From positions 124,001-188,000 of the IMG/VR virus record IMGVR_UViG_3300035180_001778: 64,000 bases of DNA. One strand, written 5' to 3'. The notes beneath the pieces are model-generated. The model did no database searches, had not been told where the DNA came from, and was given only the letters and a program-made list of their open reading frames with translations. Each line of letters begins with the position of its first letter. Positions within the stretch are counted from its first letter, which is position 1. Of the stretch, positions 38,298-56,832 are shown piece by piece. The position numbers and the translations under genes were made by a program.

Positions 38298-41200
38298 CTA
38301 AATGCGTGCGCGAAGGTTAAATGAGAGGACCAAGAAGAGCAGCGGGAAGACCGGCTGGTAGAACGCCTGGAACCGAAGGATGGTCGGGTCGTTCGGATCG
38401 ATGGCCGATGCGATGCCCGAGAAGGCGCCCACGATCTCCGCCTGGACGAGCTGCTTGAAGAGGCCCGTCATCGAGACGTTGACCTCGTTGGTCCGGCTCG
38501 CGAGGAACTTGGAACCGACGAAGGAATCGAGGACGATGCGGCTCTGCTGTTGCACATAGTCGGCGATCTGAGTGACCGTCGGGAGGCGCGTCAGCGGAGA
38601 CGACATGTTGGTGGTGAGCCCCTGCCGGATGCGAACAAGCGGCTGGAGGTCCTCCAAGAGCGTGATCCCCGCGGCGGCCGTCTGGTTGGCCTCGACGGGA
38701 TCCATGATGCGCGGGATGCGCGTGAAGTTGACGATGCGACGCCGAGTCCAGGGCGTCGCCACATCGACCGAGGGAGACACGACAGCTCCAGCGACGGCCG
38801 CTGCAAAGAACGTCCCATCCACGAGGGAGTCGAACGTCTGCCCCAGAGCATCCGAGAGCGTGATGACAGCCGAGTCCGGGTAGAACATGGCCATCCGGTT
38901 CGAGTTCAGGCTCCGAGCGATGGTCTGCGCGTTGGTCGGGCTCGTCCCCGAAGCAAAGCCGCAGAAGCCCATCCGCTCCGCCTGGTTGCGGATGTGAGAC
39001 TGTGTCTCGACGTGCTGGGTGAGCCGCGAGTAGACCGCCGTCGAGGTCGCCAGAGGCACGAGGATGTCGGGCTTGACGTTGCCGGGCAGAGGCGTCTTCA
39101 GCTCATCGATCGCGTCGAGGAAGGAGACGTCCGTTGCCTGAGCGGTGTTCGCCGCCTTCATGACCTGCTTGATCCCGACGAGGAGAGCCCCGTTGGTGAT
39201 CGCAAGATAAGCCGCGAGGCTCACCCGGTTCTCCGCACTGACCAACCCGAAGTTCTGCTCGATCGTCTTGATCGTGCGGAAGATGCGGGTCGAGAAGTCC
39301 TGCTTGAGGAAATTGTAGGTGATGTAGTAGAAGTCACCCACCTTCGGCTCGACCCCACCCGGGTTGAACGTCTGGACGGTGGCCGTGTCGTTCACCGCGA
39401 CGCCGACCGTGTTGGCGACCCCCAGCTCCAACCCAGCGATTGCCAGGAAGGGGCGTGAGGGGTCGACCGCGAACGTCGGGGTGACGAGGAGCGTGAAAGT
39501 CCCCGCCGCATCGTACCCACCCGTCGTTGCGGGAAGGACCGTGAAGCGAAGCCCCGTCTGCGCGTCCGTGTACGTCTGGCCGGGGATGCCCGTACCAGCC
39601 GAACCAGAGGCGTTGTTCGAGGAGACCACGAAGTTGTCCTGCGCGTCTTCGCCGTTGTCCCCGTCCACCCCAGCCGTGAGCCCGATGCCCGTCGTCGCGT
39701 TGAACGCGGAGTTGGCCACCGTGTTGAAGACGATGCTGCTCGAAGCCGCTCCGACCGTCAGGGACTCGAAGGTGATGTAGTTCGAGCCGTTGATGGTATC
39801 GACGTACGCAACCCCATCGGTGAGGAAGCCCGCGGTGGCGAGGAGCGCGTCCACAACCTCCTGAGCCGACACGAGGGTCTGTGAGCCCTGCGCGTTCTGT
39901 GCGAACCCGAGAACCACATTGGCCGTCCCATCGAGGATGAGAACCGACGACTGCGGGTCGTTCGTCGAGGAGGTGAGGCGGAGCTTGTCGAGGTTGATCC
40001 CCGTACCCGCCGAAGCACGTCCCGTGGCCACAGCGTTGATGGCCGAGACCACCGCAGAGGTCGCAACCGTGGCACCCGCGGGGAGCGTCACCAAGTACTG
40101 CGCCCCGTTGACGCGGAACTTGAAGGTGTCGTTCACGCCAGCGGTGATGTTGAACGGACCGACCAGAGACCCGAGGAGCGTTGCGGGCTTGTTGATGGCC
40201 CCCGTCGTCCCATGCGAAGACTGGAAGGTCGTGAAGCCGAGGAGCGTCTCTGCCGTCCCCTGGGAAACCATGACCGTCGAGATGTCATCGAACCCGCCAG
40301 GAAGAGCCCCGGGGGTCGTGTCGCTCTTGACCACGAAGAAGACGTCACCCGTCGAGCCACCGATCTGGTGGAAGCTCGCGAGCGTGTTGGGAGCCGTTCC
40401 CGAGAACGGAGCGGTCGCATCGATGACAGCGTTGATGTCCGCGACGAGCTGCGTCGGAGTCCGGTAACCGACCGTGAGGGGGACGTTGATGAGGCCGTTG
40501 CCGCCCGTCATCCCCACCACAACGAAGCCAGCGTTGGCCACCGTCTCGGTGATGGCAGCATTGCCCACCGTTCCAGTTGCCCCGTTGACGAGAGCGACCT
40601 TGGTCGAACCTCCGATGGAGGCCGTGATGGCAAGCCCAGCTCCGACACCGTTGATCGCAGAGATCATCGCGTCGCGAACCGTGCCCACCGAATCGAGCGA
40701 GGTGAAGGCGACCGCAACATTCCCAGAGGCAACGCCACCCCCAGAATCGAACTCGAAGATCGACGGAGGGTTCACCCCATCGTCAAGAGTGAACGTCTCC
40801 CCATCGACGAGGAGGGAGCCCGCCACCGTCGTGATGAGTCCGCTCGCCGCCAGAACCCCCGCGTTGATCGAGAGGTTGAGGACGTTGGCCGGGGAAGCCG
40901 GGATGAGGATCTTGCCCGAGTTGCCGCCCGACTGAACCGGCACGACATGGCCCGAGACCAGGAAGGCCGGAGCTGCCGACGCAAGGTTCGTCGCCTGGGT
41001 GTTCCCGTTGATCCCCATCGACCAGGTGGCCGAGGAAGGAGCGTAGAACGAGTAGGGCTCCGCGAGGTTGTTCGTGAAGGCCGCGTTCGTTGCCGCAGCG
41101 GATCCGAAGGTCACGGTGACCGTCTCGACAACGGGAGTACCCGTTCCCGAGTGGAAGGCATCCGGAACCGTCTCGACCCCACGGGGCCACTGAACCGTCT

Positions 41201-42956
41201 CGCTGAGAGACGACTTCGAGCCGAAGCGGACCTGAAAGAGGTTCGTGTTCTGCTGAACCGAGAAGACCTCGTACTGCCCCATCCCAACGGCTCCAGGAAC
41301 CGTGCAAGTGAGGATGTAGGTGTCGTCCACGATCCGGTTGTAGTTGAACGTCGCGTAGGCGTTCCAGTCCGGGGGGACAGCATCCCGAAGACGAAGCAGA
41401 CGCGAGGCACCGTCCACCGTGAGAACCTTCACGGCTGCTCGACCCAAGGCATCCCGGAGAGTCCGGCCCACGAAGACCTGGATCAGATCCGGGCGGTTCG
41501 TGATGAGGTCCTGGCGGTTGTTGGTGATCGAGGCGTAGAGCGAGTTGCCGAGAGGCGTCGACCGACCGTTCCCCGTGGTGGGGATCTCAGGGAGACGGAA
41601 GTCCGTCGTCGAGACCTTCGCCGGGAGAACGGACGTGTCAGTCACCCTCGCGCAAGTCGCGAGGTAGAGCTTCTCATCGACGAGCGACCCGACGATCTGA
41701 GACTCGTTGAACGGCGTGGACCCGGGGGACGTCTTCGTGGAAGCGACCACGAAGCTCGTTCCCCAGTGTATGATCGAGACATCCGCCGAAGGATTCGAGA
41801 CAACGAAGTCCTGCCCCTGAATGAAGTCCGAACGACCGTTCGAGATACCGCAGCGGGCAACCGTGGTGACGAACGTGTTGGGGAGGTAGTCGAACGTGTC
41901 CTGCCAGGTGTTGGCCCAGTATTGAACCGTGACCACAGCTCCGCGAGCGGGAGGCGTGGCAAGGGTCACAACACCGTTGGTCCCATCGACAGACGTCGGG
42001 ATGACCTGAGCACCGTTGACCTTGACGACCACCTTGGAGGGGTCCGTCGTGGTGATTCCACCGCTCGTCCCATCGACGATGGGACGCTGGAAGACACGGA
42101 AGCTCAGGTTCCTCGACGTCTTCGTGTTCGCCAGGAAGCCGAGGGGACCGTTGGCCGAACCAGACCCGATCTCCAGCGAGACAGGAGAGGTGAGCGCGAC
42201 GTGCTTGAGCCCCTGGTTGTCCGTCGACACCGCTGTCTGAAGGTTGGGGATGATCGCTGCATCGATCTGGCTCTTGACGTTGGACGCCGTGAGGGAGCCC
42301 GCGGTGAGCGTAACCGTGTACGACGTGCCGCCGACCTTGACGACGAAGCTGTCATTGGAGCCGGTCGTGACGAGGAAGGGCTCGAACCCAGGGGACGTCA
42401 GAATGGCGTCCAGGTTCGTCACCTGATCCGAGACGTCGTCCGTGAATGCCGTGTCTCCCCGGTGGAAGAAGTAGGTCACTCGAACGACGTCCGTCGGCTG
42501 AGGCGGAATCTGAAGCGTGATGAGGCCCTTGGCACCCTGGACTGCCCCGAGAGCAACAGGCAGCCCGTTGACCGTGATCGAGGAGATGTCCTTGGTGGCG
42601 TTCGAGACCCGACCAAGGCCGCTGCCATCGACGATGGGGAAGTTGCGGACGCGGAACTGAGTCCGGGTCCCATCCTGCGCCCCGAGGATGAGGTTCTGGG
42701 GGTTCGTCGCATCGGCGACCCATGCCAGGCTCGGGTCCTCATTGACGATCTGCTGATCGATGGAAGCGCTGCTCCCTCGGACCAGTTCCAGGTCGTCTTG
42801 CACCAGTTCTTCTTGACCCACCCCGATGATCGCGGGGATCCGCAACCCACCCAGGATGTTGGTCACGTTCGCGTCTGCGAACGTCTGGGTGTAGACACCG
42901 GGGTTCATTTCCGGCGTGGGGGTGAACGTTTGGAACGGTCCGTTTCCAGTGGCCAT
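38298..42956 (-). CDS. Tail sheath protein with large inserted domains (1552 aa)
   Basis: N-terminal PGVYTQT..PAIIGVG; C-terminal sheath core (AAAVAG...AGITLLE...RIRQGLTT...ADYV...YQPVFPL). Confidence 0.9.
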   Translation of the reverse strand: MATGNGPFQTFTPTPEMNPGVYTQTFADANVTNILGGLRIPAIIGVGQEELVQDDLELVRGSSASIDQQIVNEDPSLAWVADATNPQNLILGAQDGTRTQFRVRNFPIVDGSGLGRVSNATKDISSITVNGLPVALGAVQGAKGLITLQIPPQPTDVVRVTYFFHRGDTAFTDDVSDQVTNLDAILTSPGFEPFLVTTGSNDSFVVKVGGTSYTVTLTAGSLTASNVKSQIDAAIIPNLQTAVSTDNQGLKHVALTSPVSLEIGSGSANGPLGFLANTKTSRNLSFRVFQRPIVDGTSGGITTTDPSKVVVKVNGAQVIPTSVDGTNGVVTLATPPARGAVVTVQYWANTWQDTFDYLPNTFVTTVARCGISNGRSDFIQGQDFVVSNPSADVSIIHWGTSFVVASTKTSPGSTPFNESQIVGSLVDEKLYLATCARVTDTSVLPAKVSTTDFRLPEIPTTGNGRSTPLGNSLYASITNNRQDLITNRPDLIQVFVGRTLRDALGRAAVKVLTVDGASRLLRLRDAVPPDWNAYATFNYNRIVDDTYILTCTVPGAVGMGQYEVFSVQQNTNLFQVRFGSKSSLSETVQWPRGVETVPDAFHSGTGTPVVETVTVTFGSAAATNAAFTNNLAEPYSFYAPSSATWSMGINGNTQATNLASAAPAFLVSGHVVPVQSGGNSGKILIPASPANVLNLSINAGVLAASGLITTVAGSLLVDGETFTLDDGVNPPSIFEFDSGGGVASGNVAVAFTSLDSVGTVRDAMISAINGVGAGLAITASIGGSTKVALVNGATGTVGNAAITETVANAGFVVVGMTGGNGLINVPLTVGYRTPTQLVADINAVIDATAPFSGTAPNTLASFHQIGGSTGDVFFVVKSDTTPGALPGGFDDISTVMVSQGTAETLLGFTTFQSSHGTTGAINKPATLLGSLVGPFNITAGVNDTFKFRVNGAQYLVTLPAGATVATSAVVSAINAVATGRASAGTGINLDKLRLTSSTNDPQSSVLILDGTANVVLGFAQNAQGSQTLVSAQEVVDALLATAGFLTDGVAYVDTINGSNYITFESLTVGAASSSIVFNTVANSAFNATTGIGLTAGVDGDNGEDAQDNFVVSSNNASGSAGTGIPGQTYTDAQTGLRFTVLPATTGGYDAAGTFTLLVTPTFAVDPSRPFLAIAGLELGVANTVGVAVNDTATVQTFNPGGVEPKVGDFYYITYNFLKQDFSTRIFRTIKTIEQNFGLVSAENRVSLAAYLAITNGALLVGIKQVMKAANTAQATDVSFLDAIDELKTPLPGNVKPDILVPLATSTAVYSRLTQHVETQSHIRNQAERMGFCGFASGTSPTNAQTIARSLNSNRMAMFYPDSAVITLSDALGQTFDSLVDGTFFAAAVAGAVVSPSVDVATPWTRRRIVNFTRIPRIMDPVEANQTAAAGITLLEDLQPLVRIRQGLTTNMSSPLTRLPTVTQIADYVQQQSRIVLDSFVGSKFLASRTNEVNVSMTGLFKQLVQAEIVGAFSGIASAIDPNDPTILRFQAFYQPVFPLLFLVLSFNLRARI

Positions 42957-45116: not shown

Positions 45117-46154
45117 CTACTGGTCGTTGTGCTCTTCCATCGCCAGAACCAGGAGACCCTCTGCGACGGCCGTCATCGGGTCGACGGCGGACCGGATCTC
45201 GCTGATCTGGATCGGGAAGCCCTTCTTCTTGACGTTCTCGAACTCCTCGCGGAAGATGTCGAGGAAGCCCCCTGCCCGGCTCGTGCCTCCCGAGACCACG
45301 AAGGGAATCGGCTCTTGAAGGCTGAGCGTGTTCTGGACACGGCGGAACTGCACTGCGATGTTCTCCAGGCAGTAGCGAATGAGGGTCCGGATGTAGAGGG
45401 CGAGAGCCTCTTCCTCACGGCCCTTCGGCTTCGAGATGTCGATCCCACGCTCCTTGATCGAGCACATGCGAGACGCCGTCGAGCCCGTGGCCTTTGCCGC
45501 ATGACTGTCGATCCAGTCCCCACCCCGAGCGAGCGCGAAGTCCATCCCCATCACCGTCTGGTAGGCGAGGGCAATGTTGCACATACCCGAGCCGAACGAG
45601 ACAGAGAGCCCCGAGAAGCCCTCCGCAGCGCACTGGCTGTAGATGATGGCCATGGCCTCGTTCATGGGGTGCGGCGTATAGCCGTGCTCCGCGACGATCT
45701 TCCGGAAGATCTCCGTGTGGTAGACGACGTCCTGCTCCTGGTCATCGATCGGAGACGCCGGCACCGAGTAGAAGCAGTGCTCGTCAGGAATCGTGGGGTC
45801 TTCCAAGACATGGTAGATGAGCAGGCTGAGGATCTGCTGTGCGTCCAGCTCCCCCGAGGAGATCACCCCGCGGCTGAGAGGTCGGCGAACTTCCCTCTTG
45901 AAGAGGTTCGCCATGACCATGGCCGAGTCCCCGAGAACGAGCAGGTTGCCGTCCTTCTCGACGTAGTTGACCTTCGAGAGCCGGAGCTGCTTCTTGGCCT
46001 CCAAGTCGAGGTCAATGAAGGCGTCACGCATCCGCTTGGTCTTGATGTCGTTGCCAGCCATCCGGGCGCTGACGATGTTCATCGTGCCGATGTCGAGGCC
46101 GACCCCCGGCTTGTATCCCGTGCGATCCTGTCCCATCTGATCCTTCTTTCTCAT
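45117..46154 (-). CDS. Actin-like ATPase (MreB/MamK/ParM superfamily)
   Basis: Phosphate-1 GLDIGTMN, RRPLSRGVI, connect-1 NEAMA, phosphate-2 SFGSGMCN, GGDWID, adenosine VSGGTS, AVAEG. Confidence 0.85.
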   Translation of the reverse strand: MRKKDQMGQDRTGYKPGVGLDIGTMNIVSARMAGNDIKTKRMRDAFIDLDLEAKKQLRLSKVNYVEKDGNLLVLGDSAMVMANLFKREVRRPLSRGVISSGELDAQQILSLLIYHVLEDPTIPDEHCFYSVPASPIDDQEQDVVYHTEIFRKIVAEHGYTPHPMNEAMAIIYSQCAAEGFSGLSVSFGSGMCNIALAYQTVMGMDFALARGGDWIDSHAAKATGSTASRMCSIKERGIDISKPKGREEEALALYIRTLIRYCLENIAVQFRRVQNTLSLQEPIPFVVSGGTSRAGGFLDIFREEFENVKKKGFPIQISEIRSAVDPMTAVAEGLLVLAMEEHNDQ

Positions 46155-46867
46155 TTGACTGCCATATCCCGACGGTCGTACGACGCTGTTCGGGTCCGTT
46201 GTTTCAGAACGTAGATGTGCTCCTCGTGCTTGTCTGCAATCTCTTGGAGGAGATTGTCGGTCCCGTGGGAGAGCTGGCCACGTTCATCGAGGATGGCGTA
46301 GACCATCTTCTCAAAAGCGAGAAACCGATGCACCATCCTCAAGCTGAGGAGAGCATAGTCGCTCGGGGAAGGGTCAAGAGGGGCCCCCTCGTACATGACT
46401 CGAACCAGGACCGCCGCATGGTAGGAGTGCATCAGAGGGTGAGCAAGGATGTGATGCCCTGCCCCAACGGCACGCTCGGCCACACGATCGATGAGCTTCT
46501 GGACGTCGTCGTAGAGCCGGTCGTAGAGGAGATGATCCCCATAGAACGTCGTCCCTCGGGTCTGCCAGTGGTGAGACTGGTGAACCATGGCCTCTGCTCG
46601 AAGGAACGCGAGAATCGCCGCCAGCTCGGAAAGAGGCGCACCCCCGTAATCGGCTGCGATGCTCTGGAGGATCTGGGACAGAATGATGAGTGGAGCATCC
46701 GCTTCCTTCTGTCCCGCAGTCACAGGCATTCGAGACTTCGACTCAGGGAGATAGGGAGGCCCATGCTGGGAGGGATCGTACATCGTGGGGTCGTGCCACA
46801 TTGCAAAGATCCCCTCGGCATGTTCGCTCTCTTCTCGCTCAGGTAGCTCCGGGTCTCCCTGGCGCAT
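46151..46867 (-). CDS. Ferritin/Dps-like protein
   Basis: HQSHHWQTRGTTFYGDHLLYDRLY...IDRVAER...NLLQEIADKHEEHIY. Confidence 0.8.
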   Translation of the reverse strand: MRQGDPELPEREESEHAEGIFAMWHDPTMYDPSQHGPPYLPESKSRMPVTAGQKEADAPLIILSQILQSIAADYGGAPLSELAAILAFLRAEAMVHQSHHWQTRGTTFYGDHLLYDRLYDDVQKLIDRVAERAVGAGHHILAHPLMHSYHAAVLVRVMYEGAPLDPSPSDYALLSLRMVHRFLAFEKMVYAILDERGQLSHGTDNLLQEIADKHEEHIYVLKQRTRTASYDRRDMAVK

Positions 46868-49404: not shown

Positions 49405-50744
49405 CAGTATTCCGTGTTCTCCCACGCCAAAGAACGACCTCGAAGCTGTACCTCCGCCGGGACATCAGGATGGTCGGTGGGGATAGCTTCCGCTTCGTCC
49501 TCGGGTCCCGAAGGAATGAAGCCAGCGGCGGGGTATCTCCGGGGGCCGTCCATGGGCACCTTGTACCGGATGTCCTTCTCGTCGAAGTGCCCGATGTTGA
49601 AGTGTTGCTGGAGGATCATGCCTCGGTTCGTCGGCATTCGAACGGCCCCGATGCTGTACCGTTCTCCGTTGACCTTGACCAAGAAGTCACGGTGAGCGAG
49701 CAAGGGTGAAGGCCCCGTCCAGGCTTCGTAGGTGTGCTCAATCGTACGACCAATGTCCTTCTGGGATATCTTCCGTTCCGCATCGTCGGGGGCGATGATG
49801 ATGTCGTAGGGCCCCTCATAGCCATCGACGATCCCCGTCCCGAAGCAGATGATGCAGTCGTTGATGGGCTGGTTGTGGAAGTCATCCTCGATGCAGGGGC
49901 AAGGGAGCCCCACGTTCTTTCGGAGGAAGACCTTCACCCGCTCCCCACCCTGCTCCAGAATCCAACGGTTCCGGTGGACAGCTTCACGCCAGATGTAGTC
50001 GAGCTTCTCGATCTCGAAGCTCGACGTCGAGATCGCGTTCTCCAGGGGTGTCTCGACGACTTTCCCTGTCGAATCGCTCGCCAAGATACCCACCGTCGTG
50101 ACTCGGTAGAACACCCGCTGAGAGAGGTCGGTACGAAGCAGGGACCTCACCCGCCGATAGGAACAGAGGACCTGGCTGTCCTCCTTCGGGTACACAGGAA
50201 GGACAGCCTTCTGGGTCGCCACGTCGGCCTGTACGGAGCCGTCGATCTCGACTTCACCCACGAAGCCTCGGACGGCTTTCACGACCGCCTGAACCCCATC
50301 CACGTAGACGTAGACATCCTCGGGGCTGTCCGCGTTCGTCCCCTGCGAGCCGGACTTCACGATGGGGTAGTGGAGCGTCTTGAAGACGTACCGGCGGAGG
50401 TCGTGGCTCACGCTGGCCTGACCCTTCAAGACGAAATTCGCCGAGACGTCTTCCTCGACAATCAGCTCGATATCTGTGCGATCACGCCAATAGGTCGACC
50501 CCACAGGGAGATTCGTCAGCCGTTGAAAGGGCCCGAATTCACTGTCGAAGCTACGGTAGACGTTCACCCCCAAAAGGATGAAGTCTCCGTTACGGCTGAG
50601 CTGGGAAGGGTCGTCCCATACCAGGTCGAAGATCCACGCTTCGTACCCACTGGTGAGGAAGAGATTCAACGGCGGAGCCGGCCACGGAGCCCTGGAAATC
50701 TCCAGGTTGGTGATCGGTCGGTCTCGTTGAGTTGCGTACGGCAT
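49404..50744 (-). CDS. Head closure/neck protein
   Basis: GERVKVF..K..G..CPC...C..CFGTG.V.GY...WTGPSP...RDF pattern. Confidence 0.6.
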   Translation of the reverse strand: MPYATQRDRPITNLEISRAPWPAPPLNLFLTSGYEAWIFDLVWDDPSQLSRNGDFILLGVNVYRSFDSEFGPFQRLTNLPVGSTYWRDRTDIELIVEEDVSANFVLKGQASVSHDLRRYVFKTLHYPIVKSGSQGTNADSPEDVYVYVDGVQAVVKAVRGFVGEVEIDGSVQADVATQKAVLPVYPKEDSQVLCSYRRVRSLLRTDLSQRVFYRVTTVGILASDSTGKVVETPLENAISTSSFEIEKLDYIWREAVHRNRWILEQGGERVKVFLRKNVGLPCPCIEDDFHNQPINDCIICFGTGIVDGYEGPYDIIIAPDDAERKISQKDIGRTIEHTYEAWTGPSPLLAHRDFLVKVNGERYSIGAVRMPTNRGMILQQHFNIGHFDEKDIRYKVPMDGPRRYPAAGFIPSGPEDEAEAIPTDHPDVPAEVQLRGRSLAWENTEY

Positions 50745-50774
50745 GTGCCTTACAGAGGCCCAGAGACAAAAAGA

Positions 50775-51059
50775 TTACCCTTTCGGGATCGGCTTCAAGG
50801 GGAATAGCTTCCCCGTCTCGTCAATATCCACAGGGAAGTCCGGCGGTAGCCCACGATCCATGAGGATCTTCTGGAAGACCTTGTCCCGCTCATCTCGAAG
50901 AGGCCGCGCTGCCACAAGAAGGCGGATCTTCTCTTCCTCCAAGTCGAGGAGCTGGGCCGCGAGCATCTTCCGGGTCTCGTCCACTTCCGCGAGGTGCTTC
51001 ATGGTGGTCGCATCGACCGGGTCGTTCACGGTGAGCTTCTTCTCGGATTCGTTACTCAT
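50775..51059 (-). CDS. Small coiled-coil protein
   Basis: MSNESEKKL...; helical. Confidence 0.65.
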   Translation of the reverse strand: MSNESEKKLTVNDPVDATTMKHLAEVDETRKMLAAQLLDLEEEKIRLLVAARPLRDERDKVFQKILMDRGLPPDFPVDIDETGKLFPLKPIPKG

Positions 51060-51112
51060 TTTCATCTCGTTGTTGATCGTCGGGGCTCGAAGCTTGTACG
51101 ACGTGTATGTCT

Positions 51113-51364
51113 ATGAACCAAAGTACCGAAGTCCCCCTGTCCATGCCGATGGACGTGGAGATGGCCATCAACCTCGCAACGGATGGGGCCCTTCACGCCC
51201 TTTTCCACATCTGCAAGCAGACCGGGTGGACGCCGCACGTCGTGAACGTCCCCGAAGCCTCCGGCCTCCGCATGATCTTCATGGCCACGGACGCGAAGGA
51301 CAAGACCTGCTACTTCGACAGCGCGGTGCTCAAGCCGCCGGCCGCTCCCCTGTCGCTGAACTGA
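51113..51364 (+). CDS. Hypothetical protein
   Basis: Plausible codon usage; fills the gap between minus-strand genes. Confidence 0.55.
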   Translation: MNQSTEVPLSMPMDVEMAINLATDGALHALFHICKQTGWTPHVVNVPEASGLRMIFMATDAKDKTCYFDSAVLKPPAAPLSLN

Positions 51365-51687
51365 TCCCCGTCCACGTACTTCTTCGCCAGGAGACGAAGA
51401 AACACCTCGAACTGTGCCGGGTTGATCCCGTTGCGGAGAAGCGCATCCTTGCGTGCTTTCTCGGACAACGACTGGGAGCATGTCGAGAGGTGGCAATCAA
51501 CCCGGTGATTGCACTCGGTGCATCTGTGATTGTCGCTCTGAAGAAGCGCTGCCTTCCGACGCTGGATCGACAACCCTCGCGGGTCCGGCCGGTCCTTCCA
51601 CAAGCGACATCGGGCTCGATGTCGCTTCATCGGATTCAGGCCCCGCCCTAGAAAACCGCAAATACAAGGGTGAACGAAGGCGGGCAT
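51310..51687 (-). CDS. Cys/His-rich zinc-binding protein
   Basis: CICG...H...C, CTEC...H...C; GGTGTA-N10-ATG start. Confidence 0.6.
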   Translation of the reverse strand: MPAFVHPCICGFLGRGLNPMKRHRARCRLWKDRPDPRGLSIQRRKAALLQSDNHRCTECNHRVDCHLSTCSQSLSEKARKDALLRNGINPAQFEVFLRLLAKKYVDGDQFSDRGAAGGLSTALSK

Positions 51688-51696
51688 GCTCCGTCC

Positions 51697-52605
51697 CTAC
51701 ACCGCCGCCGACCCCTGCTCCTCGGGGTACATCAGCGTGAAGAACTTCATCTCCGAGACCTGATTGGGGATCACGTCCCCCGTCGCGAAGACGGCCACCT
51801 GTCCGCGAGGAACCTCCCGCGAGACGTGGATCTGAGCGCCGTGGAAGACCCCCATGATCCCCTTGCGGAGGATGACGGCTTGGCTCTCGATGTCCAGGAC
51901 ATCGCGTCCGTACTTGCGGAGGTCCGCATACTCGTATGCGTTCATGTAGATGTGCTCGACCTTCTTGTCCTCAGACCCATGGGGGGCGAAGACCCTCTCC
52001 GCGTAGGCCTTCAGCACAGCCGCTTTTCGGGCCACAGCATCCGGATGGGGGCCCACCGAAACAACCCCCCCATGGTCGCAGAGGTTCACGAGCTTCGTCC
52101 GGATCAGCTCCGGAGTGATCACAAGGGTGGGGAAGTCTACGTCGTCTGCAAACCCACAGGCAAAGCCCGGAGGAACTTCCTTGGAGAGGAAGACCTGAGC
52201 GTTCCACAAGCTCCCCATGATGCCAGCCCGAAGAAGTTCTCCGTTGTGTTGCGCGTCAAAAGACGCGGAGCATTCGCTCCGCAGAGTCATGTATTCTTCC
52301 ATGTTGAGGTAGATCCGAACAACACGGACATCATTCCGCTCGATATGTGCATAGACCTTGCTGGCCAGAGCCTCCAGAAGCGTCTCCCCCTTGGTCAGAA
52401 GGCCCTTGAGAGCGACGGCCGCGTTTGCGGTCATCACCGCATCCCGGATGTGCCGAATTGCCACCGATTGGTCCTCCCCCGCGGGAGTACACGCGAGAAC
52501 GACCGAGGCGAACGTCTTCGCGGCATCCCGGATCATCTCGTACTTCGGGAGCTGGTCTTCGGTGGGGCGGTGGTACGTGAAGATGTGATTTAGATCGAAT
52601 GCCAT
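51697..52605 (-). CDS. Acb2/Tad1-like hairpin domain fused to two tandem capsid-protein-like repeats
   Basis: N-terminal FTYHRP..DQ..KY..IR..A...P...DQSVA...VMTANAAVA; repeats IYLN..EY..LR...GIMG.LWNAQVFLSKEVP.G and IYMN..EYADLR...GIMG.FHGAQIHVSREVP.G. Confidence 0.65.
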   Translation of the reverse strand: MAFDLNHIFTYHRPTEDQLPKYEMIRDAAKTFASVVLACTPAGEDQSVAIRHIRDAVMTANAAVALKGLLTKGETLLEALASKVYAHIERNDVRVVRIYLNMEEYMTLRSECSASFDAQHNGELLRAGIMGSLWNAQVFLSKEVPPGFACGFADDVDFPTLVITPELIRTKLVNLCDHGGVVSVGPHPDAVARKAAVLKAYAERVFAPHGSEDKKVEHIYMNAYEYADLRKYGRDVLDIESQAVILRKGIMGVFHGAQIHVSREVPRGQVAVFATGDVIPNQVSEMKFFTLMYPEEQGSAAV

Positions 52606-52621
52606 GTGATTTCTCCTGGGA

Positions 52622-53521
52622 TCAGAATCCCGTGAACTTTCTGGGGGTCAGGACTCCAGCTCCGGTATAGGGGCCGAAGGCCGACCGGATACCAACCCCG
52701 AACTTGGGTTGCTGGAGACCGCGAACGTAGTTGACCGTGGCCTTGGCCTTTTCGAGCTGCTTGTCGAACTGCTCGGTTGAGGACTGGAGAGCCCCCTCAT
52801 ACTTGCTGGCCTTGTCGAGGTTCAGGGATACACCGCCAATCGAGTAATCGAACTCGTCGGCAATCCAGTTGATGCGGACCGCCTGGAGGGCGTGGATCAT
52901 CCCTCCCGTGAGGAGCAGCGTCCGCCACTCGGGGCGAGCCCGGCACATCTGGTCGATGTTCGCGAACGGTGTCCTCGGAGGTGAGGCGATGACCATGTCC
53001 ATCGATCGCTCGATGAACTCTTGCAGCTCTTCGTCCTCCCAGATGTACCCGAAGACCCTGTTGTACTGCTTCACGGTGGTCTCCCGTGAAGGCGGCCTGA
53101 AGTGGTAGTTCCGGTCCGGGTTGTTGTCCCGAAGGAGCATGCGCAGCCGGCGCATGAGGTCCCTCTCGATGAGGGTGTACGTCGCCGGGCCCCACTCCCC
53201 CACGGTCGTCTTGTCCACCACCTCGAACTCCTGGACGACCTGCTGAATGGGAGCCCCGACCAGCTCCCGAATCGTCCAACGGATCCGGTAGTTGCCGACG
53301 TTGGCATCGAGGGGGATCACGATGCTGGCGTAGTACTCCCCAACCGAGGGGTTCGCAGGGTTCCTTCGAGGAGGCCCCACAACGACCTCCCCTCCCGTCG
53401 TGAAGTCGAGGAGAGCGTACGTGATCTCGGCAGCGTTGGTGGGCGTGCCCGAGGCGTTGACCAAGAAGATGTTGAGGTCGCTACGCCCGAGCTGTTGCCC
53501 TCGGAAGAATGCTGTGCCCAT
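52622..53521 (-). CDS. Head-tail adaptor/neck protein with N-terminal Ig-like domain
   Basis: LRMLLRDNNPD...DEELQEFI...DEFDYSIGGVSL. Confidence 0.65.
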   Translation of the reverse strand: MGTAFFRGQQLGRSDLNIFLVNASGTPTNAAEITYALLDFTTGGEVVVGPPRRNPANPSVGEYYASIVIPLDANVGNYRIRWTIRELVGAPIQQVVQEFEVVDKTTVGEWGPATYTLIERDLMRRLRMLLRDNNPDRNYHFRPPSRETTVKQYNRVFGYIWEDEELQEFIERSMDMVIASPPRTPFANIDQMCRARPEWRTLLLTGGMIHALQAVRINWIADEFDYSIGGVSLNLDKASKYEGALQSSTEQFDKQLEKAKATVNYVRGLQQPKFGVGIRSAFGPYTGAGVLTPRKFTGF

Positions 53522-53522
53522 G

Positions 53523-53972
53523 TCAGTCCTCCAAGGTGGACTCTGACGCCCTTGGCTGAGACCACCCCGACTTGCCTTCGATGCGATCCTTGAGGGCCTC
53601 TGCGAACGCCTGGGGGTCCGTCACATGCCCTTGGACCTTCGCGACGCACCTTGCAACAGACCCTCCAATGCTCTCCCAGAACTTCTTCCGGGAGTCATCA
53701 GTCCACCCTTCAGGAAGGTCTTTCCACTCCGCAGCTTGATGAGCTGTGGCCGCGAGCTTGAGCATGTCCTGCCCATAGATGACCGACGCGCGAATTCGGC
53801 GGATCCCCAGAGAAGCCATACGCTGCCCACAAGGCGGGCAGACCTCGGCGACATCCTCGGGGTTCAACCAGAAATCCTGGTTGAGGGCGACCTTCTTTGA
53901 CCCCGAGTAGCGATGAGCCACCCGAGAGGTCAAGTCAGAACCAGCCGCGTCGTGTTTTTCGGGGAGTGCCAT
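53523..53972 (-). CDS. Hypothetical protein, candidate internal virion protein (start uncertain)
   Basis: TSRVAHRY tag, KVA site, CPPC, LPEGWTDDS.KKFW. Confidence 0.6.
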   Translation of the reverse strand: MALPEKHDAAGSDLTSRVAHRYSGSKKVALNQDFWLNPEDVAEVCPPCGQRMASLGIRRIRASVIYGQDMLKLAATAHQAAEWKDLPEGWTDDSRKKFWESIGGSVARCVAKVQGHVTDPQAFAEALKDRIEGKSGWSQPRASESTLED

Positions 53973-55959
53973 CGTTTGGATCTTTCGCAAGAACAGCATC
54001 GAGGATGCTGAACCTGTAGTCCTCAACAAGAGGTTGAGTAGAAGGACTTAGTTGATACCGCCATCGGATCAACCAGTCCCCAGGCTGGCCCACATCATCA
54101 GACCGGAAGGTTGCGTAGTACTCTCCGACCGTTGCCATGACAGGGTAGCGTTCGGGGGAACCCACAAGCTGTTGAGAGCCTCCGGGATGCACCTGGAACA
54201 AGCTGTATGTCACTCGGTACAGCGAGCTGGGGGCTCCGTCGAGGCGCAGCAAGAAGCTCAAGTCGCCACGGCCGAAGACATGGCCAAGTCGGAACTCCCT
54301 GTACTTCTGGTGGCAACGAACGGGCCTCGGGACATGGACGAGATCCAGGTAGCCCGACAAGAGCCCCATGCCTGCCAGGGCTTCCAGCTCGGAAAGCTGG
54401 AGCCCGCCATACCCAAAAACATCCCCTATGAGCGAACGAATGAGAGCGACATTGCCTTGAAGATCGCCACCCCCAAAAGCATGGGCCGTCGGGTTCATCA
54501 CGATGCTGAGAGAACCCTGAAGCGTCCCCACTCCGAACACAACCCCAATAAAGCCAACGTCAATCAACGCACCAGAGAAGTCGCTCACCCCATCGGAGGT
54601 CCCGGACACGGAATGCACGTTGACGATAACGCCATGGAAGACCCCATCCCCGAAGGGATGCCCAGAGACACCCAAGAATCTCTGCATAGATTCCTGGGGT
54701 GCCCCGACGCCTCCCACGGACTCGGAGAAGGACAGGGTCCGAATGAGGGTGTCCTGAATCAGGCCTGAGCCCCCACTTGCGCCAGCGAGTGAGCCGAGAA
54801 TGAGAAGGGTTCCTTGCAAGCTACTGGAGCCCGCGACCAGCCCTGCAAAGTCGGCCGCTCGTAGAGCCCCTTGAGGCGACCCCTGACCAGAGGCGAGACC
54901 CTGCAACAAATGGGTCAACAGGAGGGCCTCTTGCACATCCCCGGCACCAAGAGGGGAACCTCCCAAAGAGAGACCTCGGATAAGAGGCGCTTGAAGAAGC
55001 CCTGCCCCCAGGATGCTACCCGAGAGGGGCATCGTATCTCGGACACCCCCAGAGAAAGAGGCACCCCCCGAGATTGTTCTCGCGAGCGAGATGGTGTGCA
55101 GCATTGTCCCTTGAAGGATAGCGGCACCCAACGTAGTTGAGGCGAGACGATGAATCAAGCCGACTACAGTCTGTGCAGACCCGGCCCCCACAATGGACCC
55201 TGAGACCAGCTTTGTCTGGATCACAGTCCCTTGTAGGCTCCCTGCCCCCGTCCCTGTTTGAGAGAGAGAGACCGTCCGAATGGGGGAGATTTTGGAAGGT
55301 ACGAAGGGGTAGACGATGGGCGGGTGGGGCTGGACAACCGCAGAAGTGATCGTCGGAGCTGCATTGTAGTAGTCAACGTTGTCCCGCATCATCGGGATGT
55401 AACTGACTGCTTTTGTAGGGGCGAAGAAGGGGGACGTGTTCTTCGACAGATACGAAATCACCGCCTGTGTATAGGTGCCGCTCCAATGGGCATACTCGGC
55501 GAGCTGCCCATCGAAAGCTCGCGACCCCGTCGGTTGATTACCGAGCACATAAATGCCCGTGGACGTGATTGCAGGGAGAGTCGTCCCAAAAGCTACGTTT
55601 GTCGTTACTTGTGCAACGCCATCAACATACAGGGTCGGGACATTCGACAACGAGGACTCGTTGTACACGAGGAGAAGATGGATCCATGTATTGGCGGCCG
55701 TACCCCCCGTGAAGTACCACTGCCCTGTCCCAGCCGTGAAGACACGGAGGAACTCCCACCGAGCATTGATACCATTCCACCGGAACTGAGTGATGAACGC
55801 CCCACCGTTCTGTTTTTGATACACACGTCCGAGGCTCCCACCCCCAGGACCCGTCCGGTATACCCAAATACTGTATGTGGAGTTGGTAGTGTGCGTCGTG
55901 TAAGCAGTGTTGCTTACATCAAGCTGCCCTGTCCCAGACAACCCAAAACCAAGAGACAT
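53935..55959 (-). CDS. LamG/concanavalin-like domain protein with Gly-rich repeats (fibre/decoration)
   Basis: YSIWV...NTWIHLLLVY...LYVDG...LGN...FDGQLAE; ~22-aa G.G.LQG.L repeats; C-terminal Ig-like domain like the N-terminus of 52622. Confidence 0.75.
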   Translation of the reverse strand: MSLGFGLSGTGQLDVSNTAYTTHTTNSTYSIWVYRTGPGGGSLGRVYQKQNGGAFITQFRWNGINARWEFLRVFTAGTGQWYFTGGTAANTWIHLLLVYNESSLSNVPTLYVDGVAQVTTNVAFGTTLPAITSTGIYVLGNQPTGSRAFDGQLAEYAHWSGTYTQAVISYLSKNTSPFFAPTKAVSYIPMMRDNVDYYNAAPTITSAVVQPHPPIVYPFVPSKISPIRTVSLSQTGTGAGSLQGTVIQTKLVSGSIVGAGSAQTVVGLIHRLASTTLGAAILQGTMLHTISLARTISGGASFSGGVRDTMPLSGSILGAGLLQAPLIRGLSLGGSPLGAGDVQEALLLTHLLQGLASGQGSPQGALRAADFAGLVAGSSSLQGTLLILGSLAGASGGSGLIQDTLIRTLSFSESVGGVGAPQESMQRFLGVSGHPFGDGVFHGVIVNVHSVSGTSDGVSDFSGALIDVGFIGVVFGVGTLQGSLSIVMNPTAHAFGGGDLQGNVALIRSLIGDVFGYGGLQLSELEALAGMGLLSGYLDLVHVPRPVRCHQKYREFRLGHVFGRGDLSFLLRLDGAPSSLYRVTYSLFQVHPGGSQQLVGSPERYPVMATVGEYYATFRSDDVGQPGDWLIRWRYQLSPSTQPLVEDYRFSILDAVLAKDPNDGTPRKTRRGWF

Positions 55960-55962
55960 GGT

Positions 55963-56445
55963 TTAGGTCTCCCGGCCTTCAGCTCCTCGGAACTGGAGGT
56001 TACCCGCCATGGTGTCGGTCCCGGCCACATCGCGATCAATCTTGATCCACCCCAAGTCGCCTCCGACCATACCGTTGATTTGAGAGTTGGTGAACGTGAT
56101 AGTCGCAACAACGATCAAACCGACGGTGCCAGGCACAGCCGTAGCCACTGAAGACACAAGCGAAGCAAACACAGGCGGACTTGATTGGGTCCCTGAATTG
56201 AGTCGCGAAAACCCAGCACGGACAACCACATTACCCGATGTGGCCGTCTGAGCGTTGTATTCCAGCTTGAGGGTGATCCCCCCTCCTCCGTAATGCTCTT
56301 CAAAACGGATCGGGTACATCGCGGCGGTATTTTGCGCATAGTTGATAACGAACCCGAAGTTCGTATCAGGAAGCGCAGAAGTGACCGAGGGGGCGATCTG
56401 AAACCCCTGGGGAAATACCTGGAAGACTGTTTGGCCGGAGGCCAT
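55963..56445 (-). CDS. Beta-rich virion protein
   Basis: ORF in the structural run. Confidence 0.65.
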   Translation of the reverse strand: MASGQTVFQVFPQGFQIAPSVTSALPDTNFGFVINYAQNTAAMYPIRFEEHYGGGGITLKLEYNAQTATSGNVVVRAGFSRLNSGTQSSPPVFASLVSSVATAVPGTVGLIVVATITFTNSQINGMVGGDLGWIKIDRDVAGTDTMAGNLQFRGAEGRET

Positions 56446-56448
56446 GGA

Positions 56449-56832
56449 TCAGGACTCGGTGACGATGAGCTGGCCGGAGGGGAACTTCACCTGGTCGTTC
56501 GTGAGAACGGACCGGGAAGCCGTGAGGTTCGCGAAGTAGAGAAGGTTGCCCGCTGTCGAGGCATCGAGGAGAGCGAAGGCCACCACCGTCCCCCAGTCCG
56601 CTGTGGCGATGGGGAACACCACGTCGACAGAGCTGGCTGAGGCACCACCGGAAGGGGCAGCGAACGTGGCCGCCTGACGCACATAGGAGCCGCCAGTCAC
56701 CTCCGTCCCACCGCCACCAATGCCCGGGGCCACCGTGTAGAGAGCGACGTAGGACGTCGCCGGGACGGTGAACGCCGTGTTCCGTAGAACCGAGTTCAGA
56801 ACTTGATTGATGAGGTATGTGCTCTTAGGCAT
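56449..56832 (-). CDS. Phage fibre-associated structural protein
   Basis: STYL.N..LN...YVALYT..P...GTEVTGGSYVRQ...WGTV...DASTAGNLL. Confidence 0.8.
   Translation of the reverse strand: MPKSTYLINQVLNSVLRNTAFTVPATSYVALYTVAPGIGGGGTEVTGGSYVRQAATFAAPSGGASASSVDVVFPIATADWGTVVAFALLDASTAGNLLYFANLTASRSVLTNDQVKFPSGQLIVTES

What the first reader, a model, noticed from the sequence alone, without database searches (positions are those of the whole stretch)
51697..52605. Acb2/Tad1-like sponge domain fused to two capsid-like fragments
Seen: an N-terminal ~66-aa helical hairpin (FTYH.P...Q...Y..IR...VMTANAAVA) followed by two ~75-aa internal repeats. From memory: the hairpin pattern fits the Acb2/Tad1-like family of immune-signal sponges, and the repeats (IYMN..EYADLRKYGRDVLDIESQ..ILRKGIMG...GAQIHVSR.VP.G) resemble part of HK97-fold major capsid proteins of related large phages. 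Inference: a dual counter-defence protein (capsid decoy plus nucleotide sponge), or a sponge tethered to capsid-sensing immune receptors or to assembling capsids.
Basis: partly seen in the sequence, partly recalled or inferred. Interest (0 to 1): 0.8.

Follow-up and report, generated by a model that had tools for sequence, protein, structure and literature searches.

The report
Immune-signal sponge fused to capsid pieces
A giant phage from sediment and microbial-mat metagenomes encodes a protein that joins a domain of the Acb2/Tad1 family, known to soak up bacterial alarm nucleotides, to two copies of one piece of a phage capsid protein; I found no published description of this architecture, and it may link signal sponging to the capsid.

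Summary
Window 51697-52605 (minus strand) is an intact 302-aa gene.

- **N-terminal domain (aa 1-72):** it matches Pfam PF24729, the Acb2/Tad1 hairpin, at 49 bits against a cut-off of 27.
- **Two internal repeats (aa 73-169 and 194-291):** they match each other at E 3e-15. Both are homologous to the A-domain segment of HK97-fold major capsid proteins of jumbo phages (phage G gp27, E 1e-8). Structure models match only capsid proteins.
- **The gene is real:** it is identical on five contigs and held by four DNA runs. It follows a neck/adaptor-like gene after a 16-bp gap.
- **Evolution:** a collinear sister phage has the hairpin plus only repeat 1. The protein is 39% identical to that orthologue, against 63-71% for the two best-conserved flanking genes.
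- **Architecture elsewhere:** hairpin plus capsid fragment recurs in about seven divergent clusters.

Best reading: a late-expressed Acb2/Tad1-family sponge with capsid A-domain modules attached. Repeat 1 is old and decayed. Repeat 2 is lineage-specific and keeps the capsid protein's polar motif.

Ligand binding, oligomeric state and any decoy or tether role are untested. The phage's own capsid gene was not recovered.

Verdict: a new variant of a known kind; interest is moderate to high.

The parts
51697..52605 (-). Whole gene, 302 aa plus the stop codon (stop at 51697-51699)
   Evidence: ORF list and translation. It is identical on five contigs from JGI and Logan assemblies. Single contigs in DNA runs X1, X2 and X4 span it with 0 differences; X3 has an 18-nt gap between two contigs.
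52613..52617 (-). Ribosome-binding site AGGAG, 7 nt before the ATG, inside the 16-bp gap after the upstream 299-aa gene
   Evidence: Read directly from the sequence. No promoter-like site was found in 50500-56500, and terminator-like sites were at chance level. Co-transcription with the upstream gene is inferred from this.
52390..52605 (-). aa 1-72: Acb2/Tad1-family helical hairpin (Pfam match aa 10-65 = 52411-52578), with Y11, H12, P14, R26, D45, R54, M58 and N61
   Evidence: Pfam PF24729 at 49 bits against a cut-off of 27. A 36-sequence profile gives the near-invariant positions. The AF2 model has helices at 19-39 and 44-66 with pLDDT 91-98. BFVD matches are 'Acb2/Tad1 hairpin domain-containing' proteins at rmsd 0.9-1.7 A over 62-64 columns. 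Tad1 7uav gives Z 5.1. An ESM Atlas Acb2/Tad1 cluster gives TM 0.84 by the matched row.
52099..52389 (-). aa 73-169: capsid A-domain module, copy 1. It is degenerate, having lost the YADLRKxGRD motif, and is orthologous to the single fragment of the sister-phage protein P0005.
   Evidence: phmmer to 6wkk_A residues 135-233, E 1.3e-8. Module HMM domain E 1e-33. AF2 pLDDT 80-90 up to about aa 145. tblastn of P0005 covers window 52599-52111 only. Motif table.
52027..52098 (-). aa 170-193: linker between the two modules, low model confidence
   Evidence: pLDDT 25-45. Nothing aligns to it in the fragment alignments.
51733..52026 (-). aa 194-291: capsid A-domain module, copy 2. It is lineage-specific and keeps the capsid motif EYADLRKYGRDVLDIESQ.
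   Evidence: Module HMM domain E 7.5e-40. Identity to jumbo-phage capsid proteins is 37-44% over the module and 60% over the core to P0002. AF2 on alignment A7 gives core pLDDT 79-90. All 50 listed PDB Foldseek matches are HK97-fold proteins (phage, satellite and encapsulin shell proteins plus the A-domain-only PF0899), with probability up to 1.00. VIA-align gives Z 8.4 to 9m66 and 6.8 to HK97 gp5 residues 244-383.
51700..51732 (-). aa 292-302: short C-terminal tail, unmodelled
   Evidence: pLDDT below 50.
52622..53521 (-). Upstream neighbour, 299 aa, probably co-transcribed. It is a widely conserved viral protein with weak leads to neck/adaptor/connector families.
   Evidence: 71% identical to the equally placed gene of the sister contig L090. 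ESM Atlas feature hits of 0.98-0.99 go to viral clusters of about 298 aa. Hits of 0.81-0.88 go to Phage_Mu_Gp36, T4 gp13, gp6-like connector and SU10 adaptor clusters; these are leads only. No Pfam or PHROG hit.

Best explanation
This is a late-operon accessory protein of a jumbo phage of about 350 kb. An Acb2/Tad1-family sponge domain (aa 1-72) has two exapted copies of the A (axial) domain of an HK97-fold major capsid protein attached to its C-terminus. Mechanism, with status marked. (1) Shown: the N-domain belongs to the Acb2/Tad1 hairpin family, and the positions that contact ligand in solved relatives (Y11, H12, R26) are among the most conserved in its subfamily. (2) Inferred: as in Acb2 and Tad1, the hairpins assemble into a hexamer or other oligomer and sequester a cyclic-nucleotide or ADPR-type alarm signal of CBASS, Thoeris or a like system. 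The gene is placed to be made late, when capsid proteins accumulate. (3) Shown: the two C-terminal modules are capsid-derived but cannot build a capsid, because the N-arm, E-loop and P-domain are absent. (4) Inferred: the proximal module (repeat 1) is old, fast-evolving and has lost the capsid motif. It is probably now part of the sponge body, acting as an oligomerisation scaffold or pocket wall. This would parallel the beta-sheet domain of Tad1 or the extra strands of Acb2_43, and the stand-alone 'A-domain encapsulins' that form complexes with partner enzymes. (5) Inferred: the distal module (repeat 2) is a lineage-specific addition that keeps the capsid protein's polar motif. It therefore probably binds whatever binds that face of the capsid protein. 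That partner could be a neighbouring capsid subunit or a host capsid sensor; which one is unknown.
For: Hairpin membership. Ligand positions: PaMx33 Acb2 uses Y11 and K26 for cyclic dinucleotides (PMC10312549). Acb2_43 uses T4, H5, K19 and K55 for 3'cADPR (10.1101/2025.08.24.671296). The HMM alignment of profile A1 to PDB 9ptq puts H5 on H12 and K19 on R26. In the screen reported in that preprint, 65 of 84 sponge homologues were active in vivo. Capsid origin of both modules. The A-domain fold can stand alone: 2pk8/PF0899 gives Z 6.2 over 90 of 94 residues, and it belongs to Family 4 A-domain encapsulins, proposed to complex with enzymes (PMC8346489). The fusion recurs: P0005, P0008, P0036/P0159/P0161 and P0131 have strong hairpins, and P0075 and P0140 have weak ones. 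Orthology and rate: the sister contig L090 is collinear; its best-conserved flanking genes are 63-71% identical (range 31-71%), while the target is 39% identical and aligns over hairpin plus repeat 1 only. Motif retention: 10-13 of 16 fragments keep Y-A-D-x-R-K-x-G-R-D. Late or structural context.
Against: No binding, oligomer or phenotype data exist for this protein or for any member of its FTYHxP subfamily that I could find. The sequence link to a solved Acb2 is weak (E 0.24), so the residue equivalences rest on a marginal alignment plus matching numbering. No equivalents of the cyclic-trinucleotide site (R67/T74 in Acb2, R88/T95 in CmTad1) could be identified. A C-terminal load of 230 aa per protomer may not be compatible with the Acb2-type hexamer; this was not modelled. 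The hairpin also resembles all-alpha MazG-like hairpins at similar Z (4.6-4.9), though it shows no obvious acidic metal-binding motif of the MazG type (my reading of the sequence). The relative placement of the domains in the AF2 model is uncertain (pTM 0.56).
Confidence: 0.5

Rival explanations
1. This is the reader's strong version: a capsid decoy or sensor antagonist coupled to a sponge. The capsid-like modules would bind a host sensor that recognises the major capsid protein (a CD-NTase, ThsB, CapRel or Lit-like sensor). They would either block it or hold the sponge at the site where the signal is made.
For: Capsid proteins trigger or modulate Thoeris, CBASS and CapRel (PMC12578639; PMC13728456; PMC10419184). 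Repeat 2 and most hairpin-less fragment proteins keep the charged capsid motif. In three two-copy proteins the C-terminal copy is the more capsid-like one. The gene evolves faster than its best-conserved neighbours.
Against: The fragment lacks the E-loop and P-loop that the staphylococcal ThsB1/B2 complex needs. A faithful mimic of a trigger would be expected to activate a sensor rather than silence it. The fusions with the best hairpins have lost the motif. The host and its defence systems are unknown.
Confidence: 0.15
2. It is a capsid-associated structural or assembly accessory, such as a decoration, cement, internal or size-determining factor. The A-domain modules would dock on capsomers and the hairpin would serve only as an oligomerisation domain.
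For: The gene lies in a run of structural-looking late genes, 16 bp behind a neck/adaptor-like gene and upstream of a 'virion structural protein' hit. This synteny is conserved in the sister phage. HK97 A-domains cluster around capsomer axes (established knowledge of the fold). A-domain encapsulins are thought to be structural.
Against: Structural proteins are usually conserved, but this gene is 39% identical to its orthologue against 63-71% for its best-conserved neighbours. Its copy number of modules differs between sister phages. Other family members (P0008, P0011) sit among small genes of mixed orientation and unknown function, not in structural modules. The hairpin's ligand-site residues are conserved, which an oligomerisation-only role would not need.
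Confidence: 0.2
3. It is a dominant-negative capsid fragment used against competing or co-infecting jumbo phages or satellites, poisoning assembly of their highly conserved capsid protein.
For: The capsid protein family it resembles is 87-94% identical across the 80 listed of 565 confirmed IMG/VR matches, so one mimic could hit many competitors. Short contigs resembling the motif region of repeat 2, probably capsid genes of related phages, occur in the same samples.
Against: It would risk poisoning the phage's own assembly. Nothing explains the fused sponge domain. There is no precedent that I know of.
Confidence: 0.07
4. It is a decaying remnant of a capsid gene duplication, or an assembly or gene-calling artefact with no function.
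For: Repeat 1 is degenerate, and the linker and tail are poorly modelled.
Against: The 909-nt frame is intact with a good ribosome-binding site and is identical in five contigs and four runs. A syntenic orthologue exists. The architecture recurs in divergent clusters. Both modules are predicted to fold.
Confidence: 0.03

Closest known systems
Acb2 (Pseudomonas phage PaMx33 Acb2; T4 Vs.4) and the Thoeris-inhibiting homologue Acb2_43 (PDB 9ptq)
   Same: Same Pfam hairpin family, with two long antiparallel helices. An aromatic residue at position 11 and a basic residue at position 26 fall where PaMx33 Acb2 has Y11 and K26. H12 and R26 align with the ligand-contacting H5 and K19 of Acb2_43. The closest relatives are stand-alone phage proteins of 65-90 aa, as Acb2_43 is.
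   Different: This protein is 302 aa, with 230 aa of capsid-derived sequence after the hairpin. K26 is replaced by R. The third helix and the R67/T74 trinucleotide site of PaMx33 Acb2 cannot be identified. There is no biochemical evidence.
Tad1 (Clostridium botulinum prophage CbTad1, PDB 7uav/7uaw)
   Same: It shares the hairpin (VIA-align Z 5.1; Foldseek 22% identity over 69 columns). It also shares the principle of a hairpin plus a beta-rich second domain in one chain. Tad1 forms its hexamer through the hairpin helices.
   Different: In Tad1 the beta-sheet domain is N-terminal and unrelated to capsid proteins. Here the extra domains are C-terminal, capsid-derived and duplicated.
HK97-fold major capsid proteins of jumbo phages (Bacillus phage G gp27, PDB 6wkk; Tunturiibacter phage Tunturi_5 gp334; the capsid-like ORF of LR745208)
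   Same: Clear sequence homology over capsid residues of about 150-260 out of 292, including the motif YADLRKWGRDVLDIESQ...G...WGA...V.VSR.VP.G. The secondary-structure order is the same, and structural matches go to the A-domain region (HK97 gp5 residues 244-383).
   Different: Only about a third of the fold is present, and it is present twice. There is no N-arm, E-loop, spine helix or C-terminal strands, so the protein cannot form a shell.
Family 4 'A-domain encapsulins' (PF0899 of Pyrococcus furiosus, PDB 2pk8; Pfam DUF1884)
   Same: They are HK97 A-domains cut loose from the rest of the fold and used as a separate module of about 100 aa. They are proposed to self-associate and to complex with a partner enzyme. 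The structural match has Z 6.2 over 90 of 94 residues, with TM 0.60 by target.
   Different: No sequence match to DUF1884. Those proteins are cellular (hyperthermophilic archaea and a few Bacteroidetes) and are encoded next to their partner rather than fused to it. The present modules derive from a jumbo-phage capsid lineage.

Membership tests
Acb2/Tad1 hairpin family (Pfam PF24729) | Match to the family HMM above the curated gathering score | tested here: met
   49 bits against a cut-off of 27, E 7.2e-13, aa 10-65 on profile positions 1-57 of 58. The database's precomputed annotation agrees.
Acb2/Tad1 hairpin family (Pfam PF24729) | Two long antiparallel helices forming a hairpin | tested here: met
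   The AF2 model has helices at 19-39 and 44-66 with pLDDT 91-98. BFVD family members superpose at rmsd 0.9-1.7 A. Tad1 gives Z 5.1.
Acb2 sponges | Ligand-contact residues in the dinucleotide/ADPR pocket (PaMx33 Y11 and K26; Acb2_43 H5 and K19) | tested here: inconclusive
   Y11, H12 and R26 are present. H12 and R26 are at least 90% conserved in 36 relatives. The only alignment to a solved Acb2 is marginal (9ptq, E 0.24). The PaMx33 equivalence rests on matching numbering and on primer-derived sequence fragments.
Acb2 / Tad1 sponges | Trinucleotide site R(i)/T(i+7) on the helix at the three-fold interface | tested here: inconclusive
   No confident equivalent was found. R54 and N61 are near-invariant and 7 residues apart, but the structural alignment to Tad1 does not put them on R90/T97. 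This site is also absent from some true Acb2 proteins, such as T4 Acb2.
Acb2 / Tad1 sponges | Hexamer (trimer of dimers) | not testable with these tools
   Only single-chain prediction was available.
Acb2 / Tad1 sponges | High-affinity binding of a cyclic oligonucleotide or cADPR isomer, and rescue of phage from CBASS or Thoeris | not testable with these tools
   This needs biochemistry and plaque assays.
Tad1 | N-terminal antiparallel beta-sheet followed by a C-terminal hairpin, about 120 aa in all | tested here: not met
   Here the hairpin is N-terminal and the added domains are C-terminal and of capsid origin.
HK97-fold major capsid protein | Sequence and structure homology to capsid proteins | tested here: met
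   6wkk at E 1.3e-8. PHROG major head families match. All 50 listed Foldseek matches for repeat 2 are HK97-fold proteins.
HK97-fold major capsid protein | Complete fold (N-arm, E-loop, P-domain with spine helix, A-domain) able to form capsomers | tested here: not met
   Each module aligns only to capsid residues of about 150-260 out of 292. The first roughly 150 and last roughly 30 capsid residues have no counterpart. The protein is therefore not a capsid protein.
Family 4 A-domain encapsulins (Pfam DUF1884) | Stand-alone HK97 A-domain fold of about 100 aa | tested here: met
   2pk8 gives Z 6.2 over 90 of 94 residues, and Foldseek probability 0.91 with TM 0.60 by target. This is similarity of fold only.
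Family 4 A-domain encapsulins (Pfam DUF1884) | Match to the DUF1884 HMM and a two-gene operon with an enzyme in thermophiles | tested here: not met
   No such Pfam hit even at E up to 10. The context is a phage late operon.

The most novel reading that the evidence does not exclude
The distal, motif-retaining capsid module is a molecular mimic of the capsid protein's A-domain face, and it docks the sponge onto a host sensor that recognises capsid proteins or onto nascent capsomers where such sensors fire. Alarm nucleotides would then be captured at their source. The gene would 'refresh' the mimic by adding new capsid-like copies as old ones decay. With two A-domains per chain and three chains on each face of an Acb2-type hexamer, six A-domains per face could reproduce the ring at the centre of a hexameric capsomer.
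Probability: 0.12. Interest if true: 0.85.

Novelty: new variant of a known kind. Interest (0 to 1): 0.62.

Why it matters
Sponge proteins such as Acb2, Tad1 and Tad2 have been described as small single-purpose proteins. The large homologue survey I read discarded proteins over 500 aa and those carrying either of two named extra domains. Here the sponge hairpin is joined to a domain lifted from the virus's own shell protein family, and this has happened in several lineages.

Major capsid proteins are now known triggers or escape loci for Thoeris, CBASS and CapRel. A natural fusion of a signal sponge with a capsid mimic is therefore a concrete, testable link between trigger and counter-measure.

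Even if the modules are only scaffolds, this adds a viral case of the HK97 A-domain being reused as a free-standing module, alongside the archaeal A-domain encapsulins. It also marks out a small family of capsid-fragment proteins in jumbo phages whose role is unknown.

Tried and rejected
- **The phage's own capsid gene was not recovered.**
  - tblastn of Tunturi_5 head proteins against the window found only the two repeats.
They returned only other phages' capsid genes.
  - The genome-collection scan returned neither the window's contig nor the sister contig.
  - Whether repeat 2 came from the phage's own capsid gene therefore stays open.
- **A maximum-likelihood tree gave no answer.** It used 16 fragments plus 7 capsid representatives and was unresolved, with 15 of 20 inner branches open. 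It does not show whether repeats 1 and 2 are sisters.
- **Two alignments were discarded.** MAFFT alignments mixing fragments with the two-repeat query split single fragments across both repeats. I used A5 and A7 instead.
- Two rows came from annotated GenBank records. I left those sequences out and used capsid genes from scanned loci.
- **Signals and expression gave nothing.**
  - The promoter scan found none, and terminator-like sites were at chance level.
  - No RNA run could be listed, so there is no expression evidence.
- **A MazG-like reading of the hairpin was rejected.** VIA-align gave Z 4.6-4.9 to DR2231. The Pfam match is strong, and I saw no obvious acidic metal-binding motif of the MazG type.
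- **An apparent gene difference between contigs was an artefact.** The neighbouring 674-aa gene looked different only because of different gene callers. All five contigs are 100% identical to the window.
Full report
**What is there.** The window is about 60% G+C. Every gene I identify by homology or synteny is on the minus strand. Few of its proteins match any PHROG or Pfam family.

The window belongs to a jumbo phage. The target protein is found, letter for letter, on contigs of up to 362,830 bp, and five fetched contigs are 100% identical to the window. Four DNA runs from sediment and microbial-mat metagenomes hold the stretch. Single contigs span the gene with no difference in runs X1, X2 and X4. 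No RNA run could be listed.

One virion protein (window 22467-23087) is 47% identical to gp329 of Tunturiibacter phage Tunturi_5, a 309-kb phage of an acidobacterium.

The target is the ORF 51697-52605 on the minus strand, 302 aa. It starts 16 bp after the stop of a 299-aa gene and has an AGGAG site 7 nt before its ATG.

- **Hairpin.** Aa 10-65 match Pfam PF24729, 'Acb2/Tad1, hairpin domain', at 49 bits against a curated cut-off of 27, E 7e-13.
- **Internal repeat.** Aa 70-162 align with aa 191-283 at 34% identity, E 3e-15. A module profile puts the copies at aa 73-169 and 194-291.
- **Capsid resemblance.**
  - The repeats hit two PHROG 'major head protein' families.
  - They hit the solved major capsid protein of Bacillus phage G (6wkk, residues 135-233, E 1.3e-8).
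  - They hit the annotated major head protein of Tunturi_5 and an ORF of the unannotated 485-kb uncultured phage LR745208 that I take to be its capsid gene.
  - Full-length capsid proteins P0002 and P0003 are 60% and 52% identical to the core of repeat 2.

**Structure.**

- An AlphaFold2 model built on an alignment covering the hairpin and repeat 1 is confident for aa 1-145 (pLDDT 80-98).
- A second model of repeat 2, built on capsid fragments, has a core pLDDT of 79-90 and the same order of helices and strands.
- Against the PDB, all 50 listed matches of repeat 2 are HK97-fold proteins. They are phage, satellite and encapsulin shell proteins plus the A-domain-only PF0899, with Foldseek probability up to 1.00.
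- VIA-align gives Z 8.4 to the NF5 capsid and 6.8 to HK97 gp5 residues 244-383. By established descriptions of the fold, that is the A (axial) domain and adjoining strands.
- The hairpin superposes on many viral 'Acb2/Tad1 hairpin domain-containing' proteins at about 1 A over 62-64 columns. It matches Tad1 at Z 5.1.
- Each module corresponds to capsid residues of about 150-260 out of 292. The N-arm, E-loop, spine helix and C-terminal strands have no counterpart. The protein therefore cannot be a shell subunit.

**The hairpin subfamily.** An exhaustive profile-free search found 2,310 relatives. Nearly all are small proteins of 65-130 aa that match only the hairpin.

- In 36 of them F9 and D45 are invariant. 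H12, P14, R26, A33, A49, R54, M58, A60, N61 and A65 are at least 90% conserved.
- In PaMx33 Acb2, Y11 stacks on the base and K26 salt-bridges the phosphate of cyclic dinucleotides (PMC10312549).
- In Acb2_43, T4, H5, K19 and K55 hold 3'cADPR (10.1101/2025.08.24.671296).
- The profile aligns to the Acb2_43 chain only marginally (E 0.24). That alignment puts H5 on H12 and K19 on R26. The target has Y at 11 and R at 26, the same numbering as PaMx33.
- So the likely ligand pocket is the best-conserved part of the domain. The residue equivalences remain an inference.
- In the experimental screen of that preprint, 65 of 84 sponge homologues inhibited at least one signalling defence. This gives a fair prior for sponge activity.
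- I could not identify the trinucleotide site.

**The capsid-fragment family.** The fusion is not unique.

- **Strong hairpin plus one fragment:** P0005, P0008, P0036/P0159/P0161 and P0131.
- **Weak but significant hairpin plus one fragment:** P0075 and P0140.
- **Fragment with other or no N-terminal parts:** P0004, P0157, P0158/P0160.
- **Two fragments, no hairpin:** P0011 and P0019.

A table of 16 fragments against the consensus of 89 distinct capsid sequences shows where the capsid identity survives.

- The polar stretch Y-A-D-x-R-K-x-G-R-D-x-L-D-x-E is kept in 10-13 of the 16 fragments.
- It is lost in repeat 1 of the target and in the fusions that have the best hairpins.
- Repeat 2 of the target keeps it almost exactly.
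- In all three two-copy proteins the C-terminal copy is the more capsid-like one.
- The capsid family itself is extremely conserved: 87-94% identity in the 80 listed of 565 confirmed IMG/VR matches.

**Orthology and rate.** P0005 lies on a 489,743-bp contig (JAWVHA010000036.1) that is collinear with window 43-59 kb.

- The 299-aa upstream neighbour is 71% identical.
- The 446/454-aa downstream gene is 63% identical.
- The actin-like gene is 71% identical.
- The target is only 39% identical, and only over aa 3-165, that is the hairpin plus repeat 1.

Repeat 1 is therefore the old, orthologous module. Repeat 2 was gained in this lineage or lost in the other. The gene changes faster than its best-conserved structural neighbours, although several small flanking genes are no better conserved (31-58%). 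Fast change is typical of genes in a conflict with the host.

Because repeat 2 carries the capsid motif almost intact while both orthologous copies have lost it, a second capture from a capsid gene is somewhat more parsimonious than a tandem duplication of repeat 1. Repeats 1 and 2 also share residues absent from the capsid consensus (IYxN, EY, LRxGIMG, S[KR]EVPxG), and the tree is unresolved. I leave this open.

**How it most likely works.** My best reading, at confidence about 0.5, has four steps.

1. The protein is made late, together with head and neck proteins.
2. The hairpins oligomerise as in Acb2 and Tad1 and sequester an alarm nucleotide.
3. Repeat 1 has become part of the sponge body. 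It would act as scaffold or pocket wall, much as Tad1 pairs its hairpin with a beta-sheet domain and Acb2_43 adds strands that shape its pocket.
4. Repeat 2 presents a capsid-like face that binds a partner of the capsid protein.

The HK97 A-domain is known to work as a free module. PF0899 (2pk8) matches at Z 6.2 over 90 of 94 residues. It is a member of the Family 4 'A-domain encapsulins', which are proposed to self-associate and to complex with enzymes (PMC8346489).

Only the domain identities, their conservation pattern and the genomic facts are shown. Oligomerisation, ligand binding, timing and partner binding are inferred.

**Rivals.**

- **Decoy or sensor tether (0.15).** Capsid proteins trigger staphylococcal Thoeris, and capsid mutations let acb2-deleted phages escape CBASS. 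However, the Thoeris contacts mapped so far lie in the E-loop and P-loop, which this fragment lacks. A true mimic of a trigger should also activate a sensor rather than silence it.
- **Purely structural or assembly role (0.2).** This fits the neighbourhood. It does not fit the fast evolution, the variable copy number or the conserved ligand-site residues.
- **Dominant-negative fragment aimed at competing phages (0.07)** and **a functionless remnant (0.03).** Both are unlikely.

**Novelty.** I found no paper describing a sponge hairpin fused to capsid-derived domains. The large homologue survey excluded proteins over 500 aa and those carrying either of two named extra domains. This is a new variant of a known kind: a member of the Acb2/Tad1 hairpin family by its Pfam match, with an unprecedented and recurrent domain partner.

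The main gaps are the phage's own capsid gene, any multimer model and all biochemistry.

Noticed in passing
window 45117-46154 (- strand): A 345-aa protein matches Pfam PF25216 'Volactin', an actin-family protein, at E 1.7e-75 and 255 bits over the whole profile. It is 71% identical in the sister phage contig L090. An actin-like gene in a jumbo phage next to structural genes may concern DNA or capsid positioning.
   Followed up: partly
window 23091-23762 and 36940-38187 (- strand): Two HNH/endonuclease VII-type homing endonuclease genes (PHROG E 1.6e-17 and 9e-11). The first lies directly beside the gp329-like virion gene, where synteny with Tunturi_5 breaks.
   Followed up: no
L080:2912-3193 (+), IMG/VR contig 3300031566_005666: A stand-alone Acb2/Tad1 hairpin ORF (frame of 94 aa, E 1.4e-9 to profile A1) lies about 650 bp downstream of the major capsid gene (1387-2259) of another phage of the same capsid family. 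It is the only stand-alone hairpin gene found beside a capsid gene in the roughly 160 capsid loci fetched by the scans.
   Followed up: partly
loci L009-L088 (IMG/VR) and L094-L173 (metagenomes): The 291-aa jumbo-phage major capsid protein family is unusually conserved: 87-94% amino-acid identity in the 80 best of 565 confirmed matches, on contigs up to 618 kb and from very different environments.
   Followed up: partly
proteins P0145, P0064, P0144, P0034, P0040: The same hairpin is fused to other, unrelated partners. In P0145 (293 aa) it is the last 65 residues after a domain of about 220 aa that I did not identify. In P0064 and P0144 it is followed by 120-160 aa of other sequence. Many proteins of 100-140 aa carry it at their C-terminus, as Tad1 does.
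   Followed up: no
protein P0084: A 4000-aa protein matched the query in 25 separate stretches (best: query aa 138-208 on residues 1626-1699, E 2e-13). I did not fetch it. It may be a repetitive protein built from A-domain-like units, or a low-complexity artefact.
   Followed up: no
proteins P0011, P0019, P0158/P0160: The hairpin-less capsid-fragment proteins have their own add-ons. P0011 and P0019 have strongly basic N-terminal tails (KRKRRIR..., KNRKQKHAVRKQ...). P0158/P0160 have a Cys-rich C-terminal tail (CECDTC). P0011 lies near a PhdYeFM antitoxin-family gene, among small genes of mixed orientation.
   Followed up: no
window 51877-51927: In all four DNA runs, short contigs of other organisms match this part of repeat 2 (the ...LDIESQA...LLK.G... 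region) at about 85-90% nucleotide identity. Their depths (2.6-44.7) differ from the phage's own depth (14.8 and 28.4 in the two runs where one contig spans the stretch). They are probably capsid genes of co-occurring related phages. None has the depth expected of this phage's own capsid gene.
   Followed up: partly
window 46151-46867 (- strand): A 238-aa protein matches PHROG 3636 'DNA binding protein' (E 4e-11) and PHROG 858 'starvation-inducible transcriptional regulator', inside the otherwise structural-looking block.
   Followed up: no
window 768-7043, 38298-42956, 27789-31301, 16441-19878 (- strand): Several very long ORFs (2091, 1552, 1170 and 1145 aa) have almost no family matches. The 1552-aa one has a faint DUF2460 hit and a syntenic 1421-aa counterpart in L090.
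   Followed up: no
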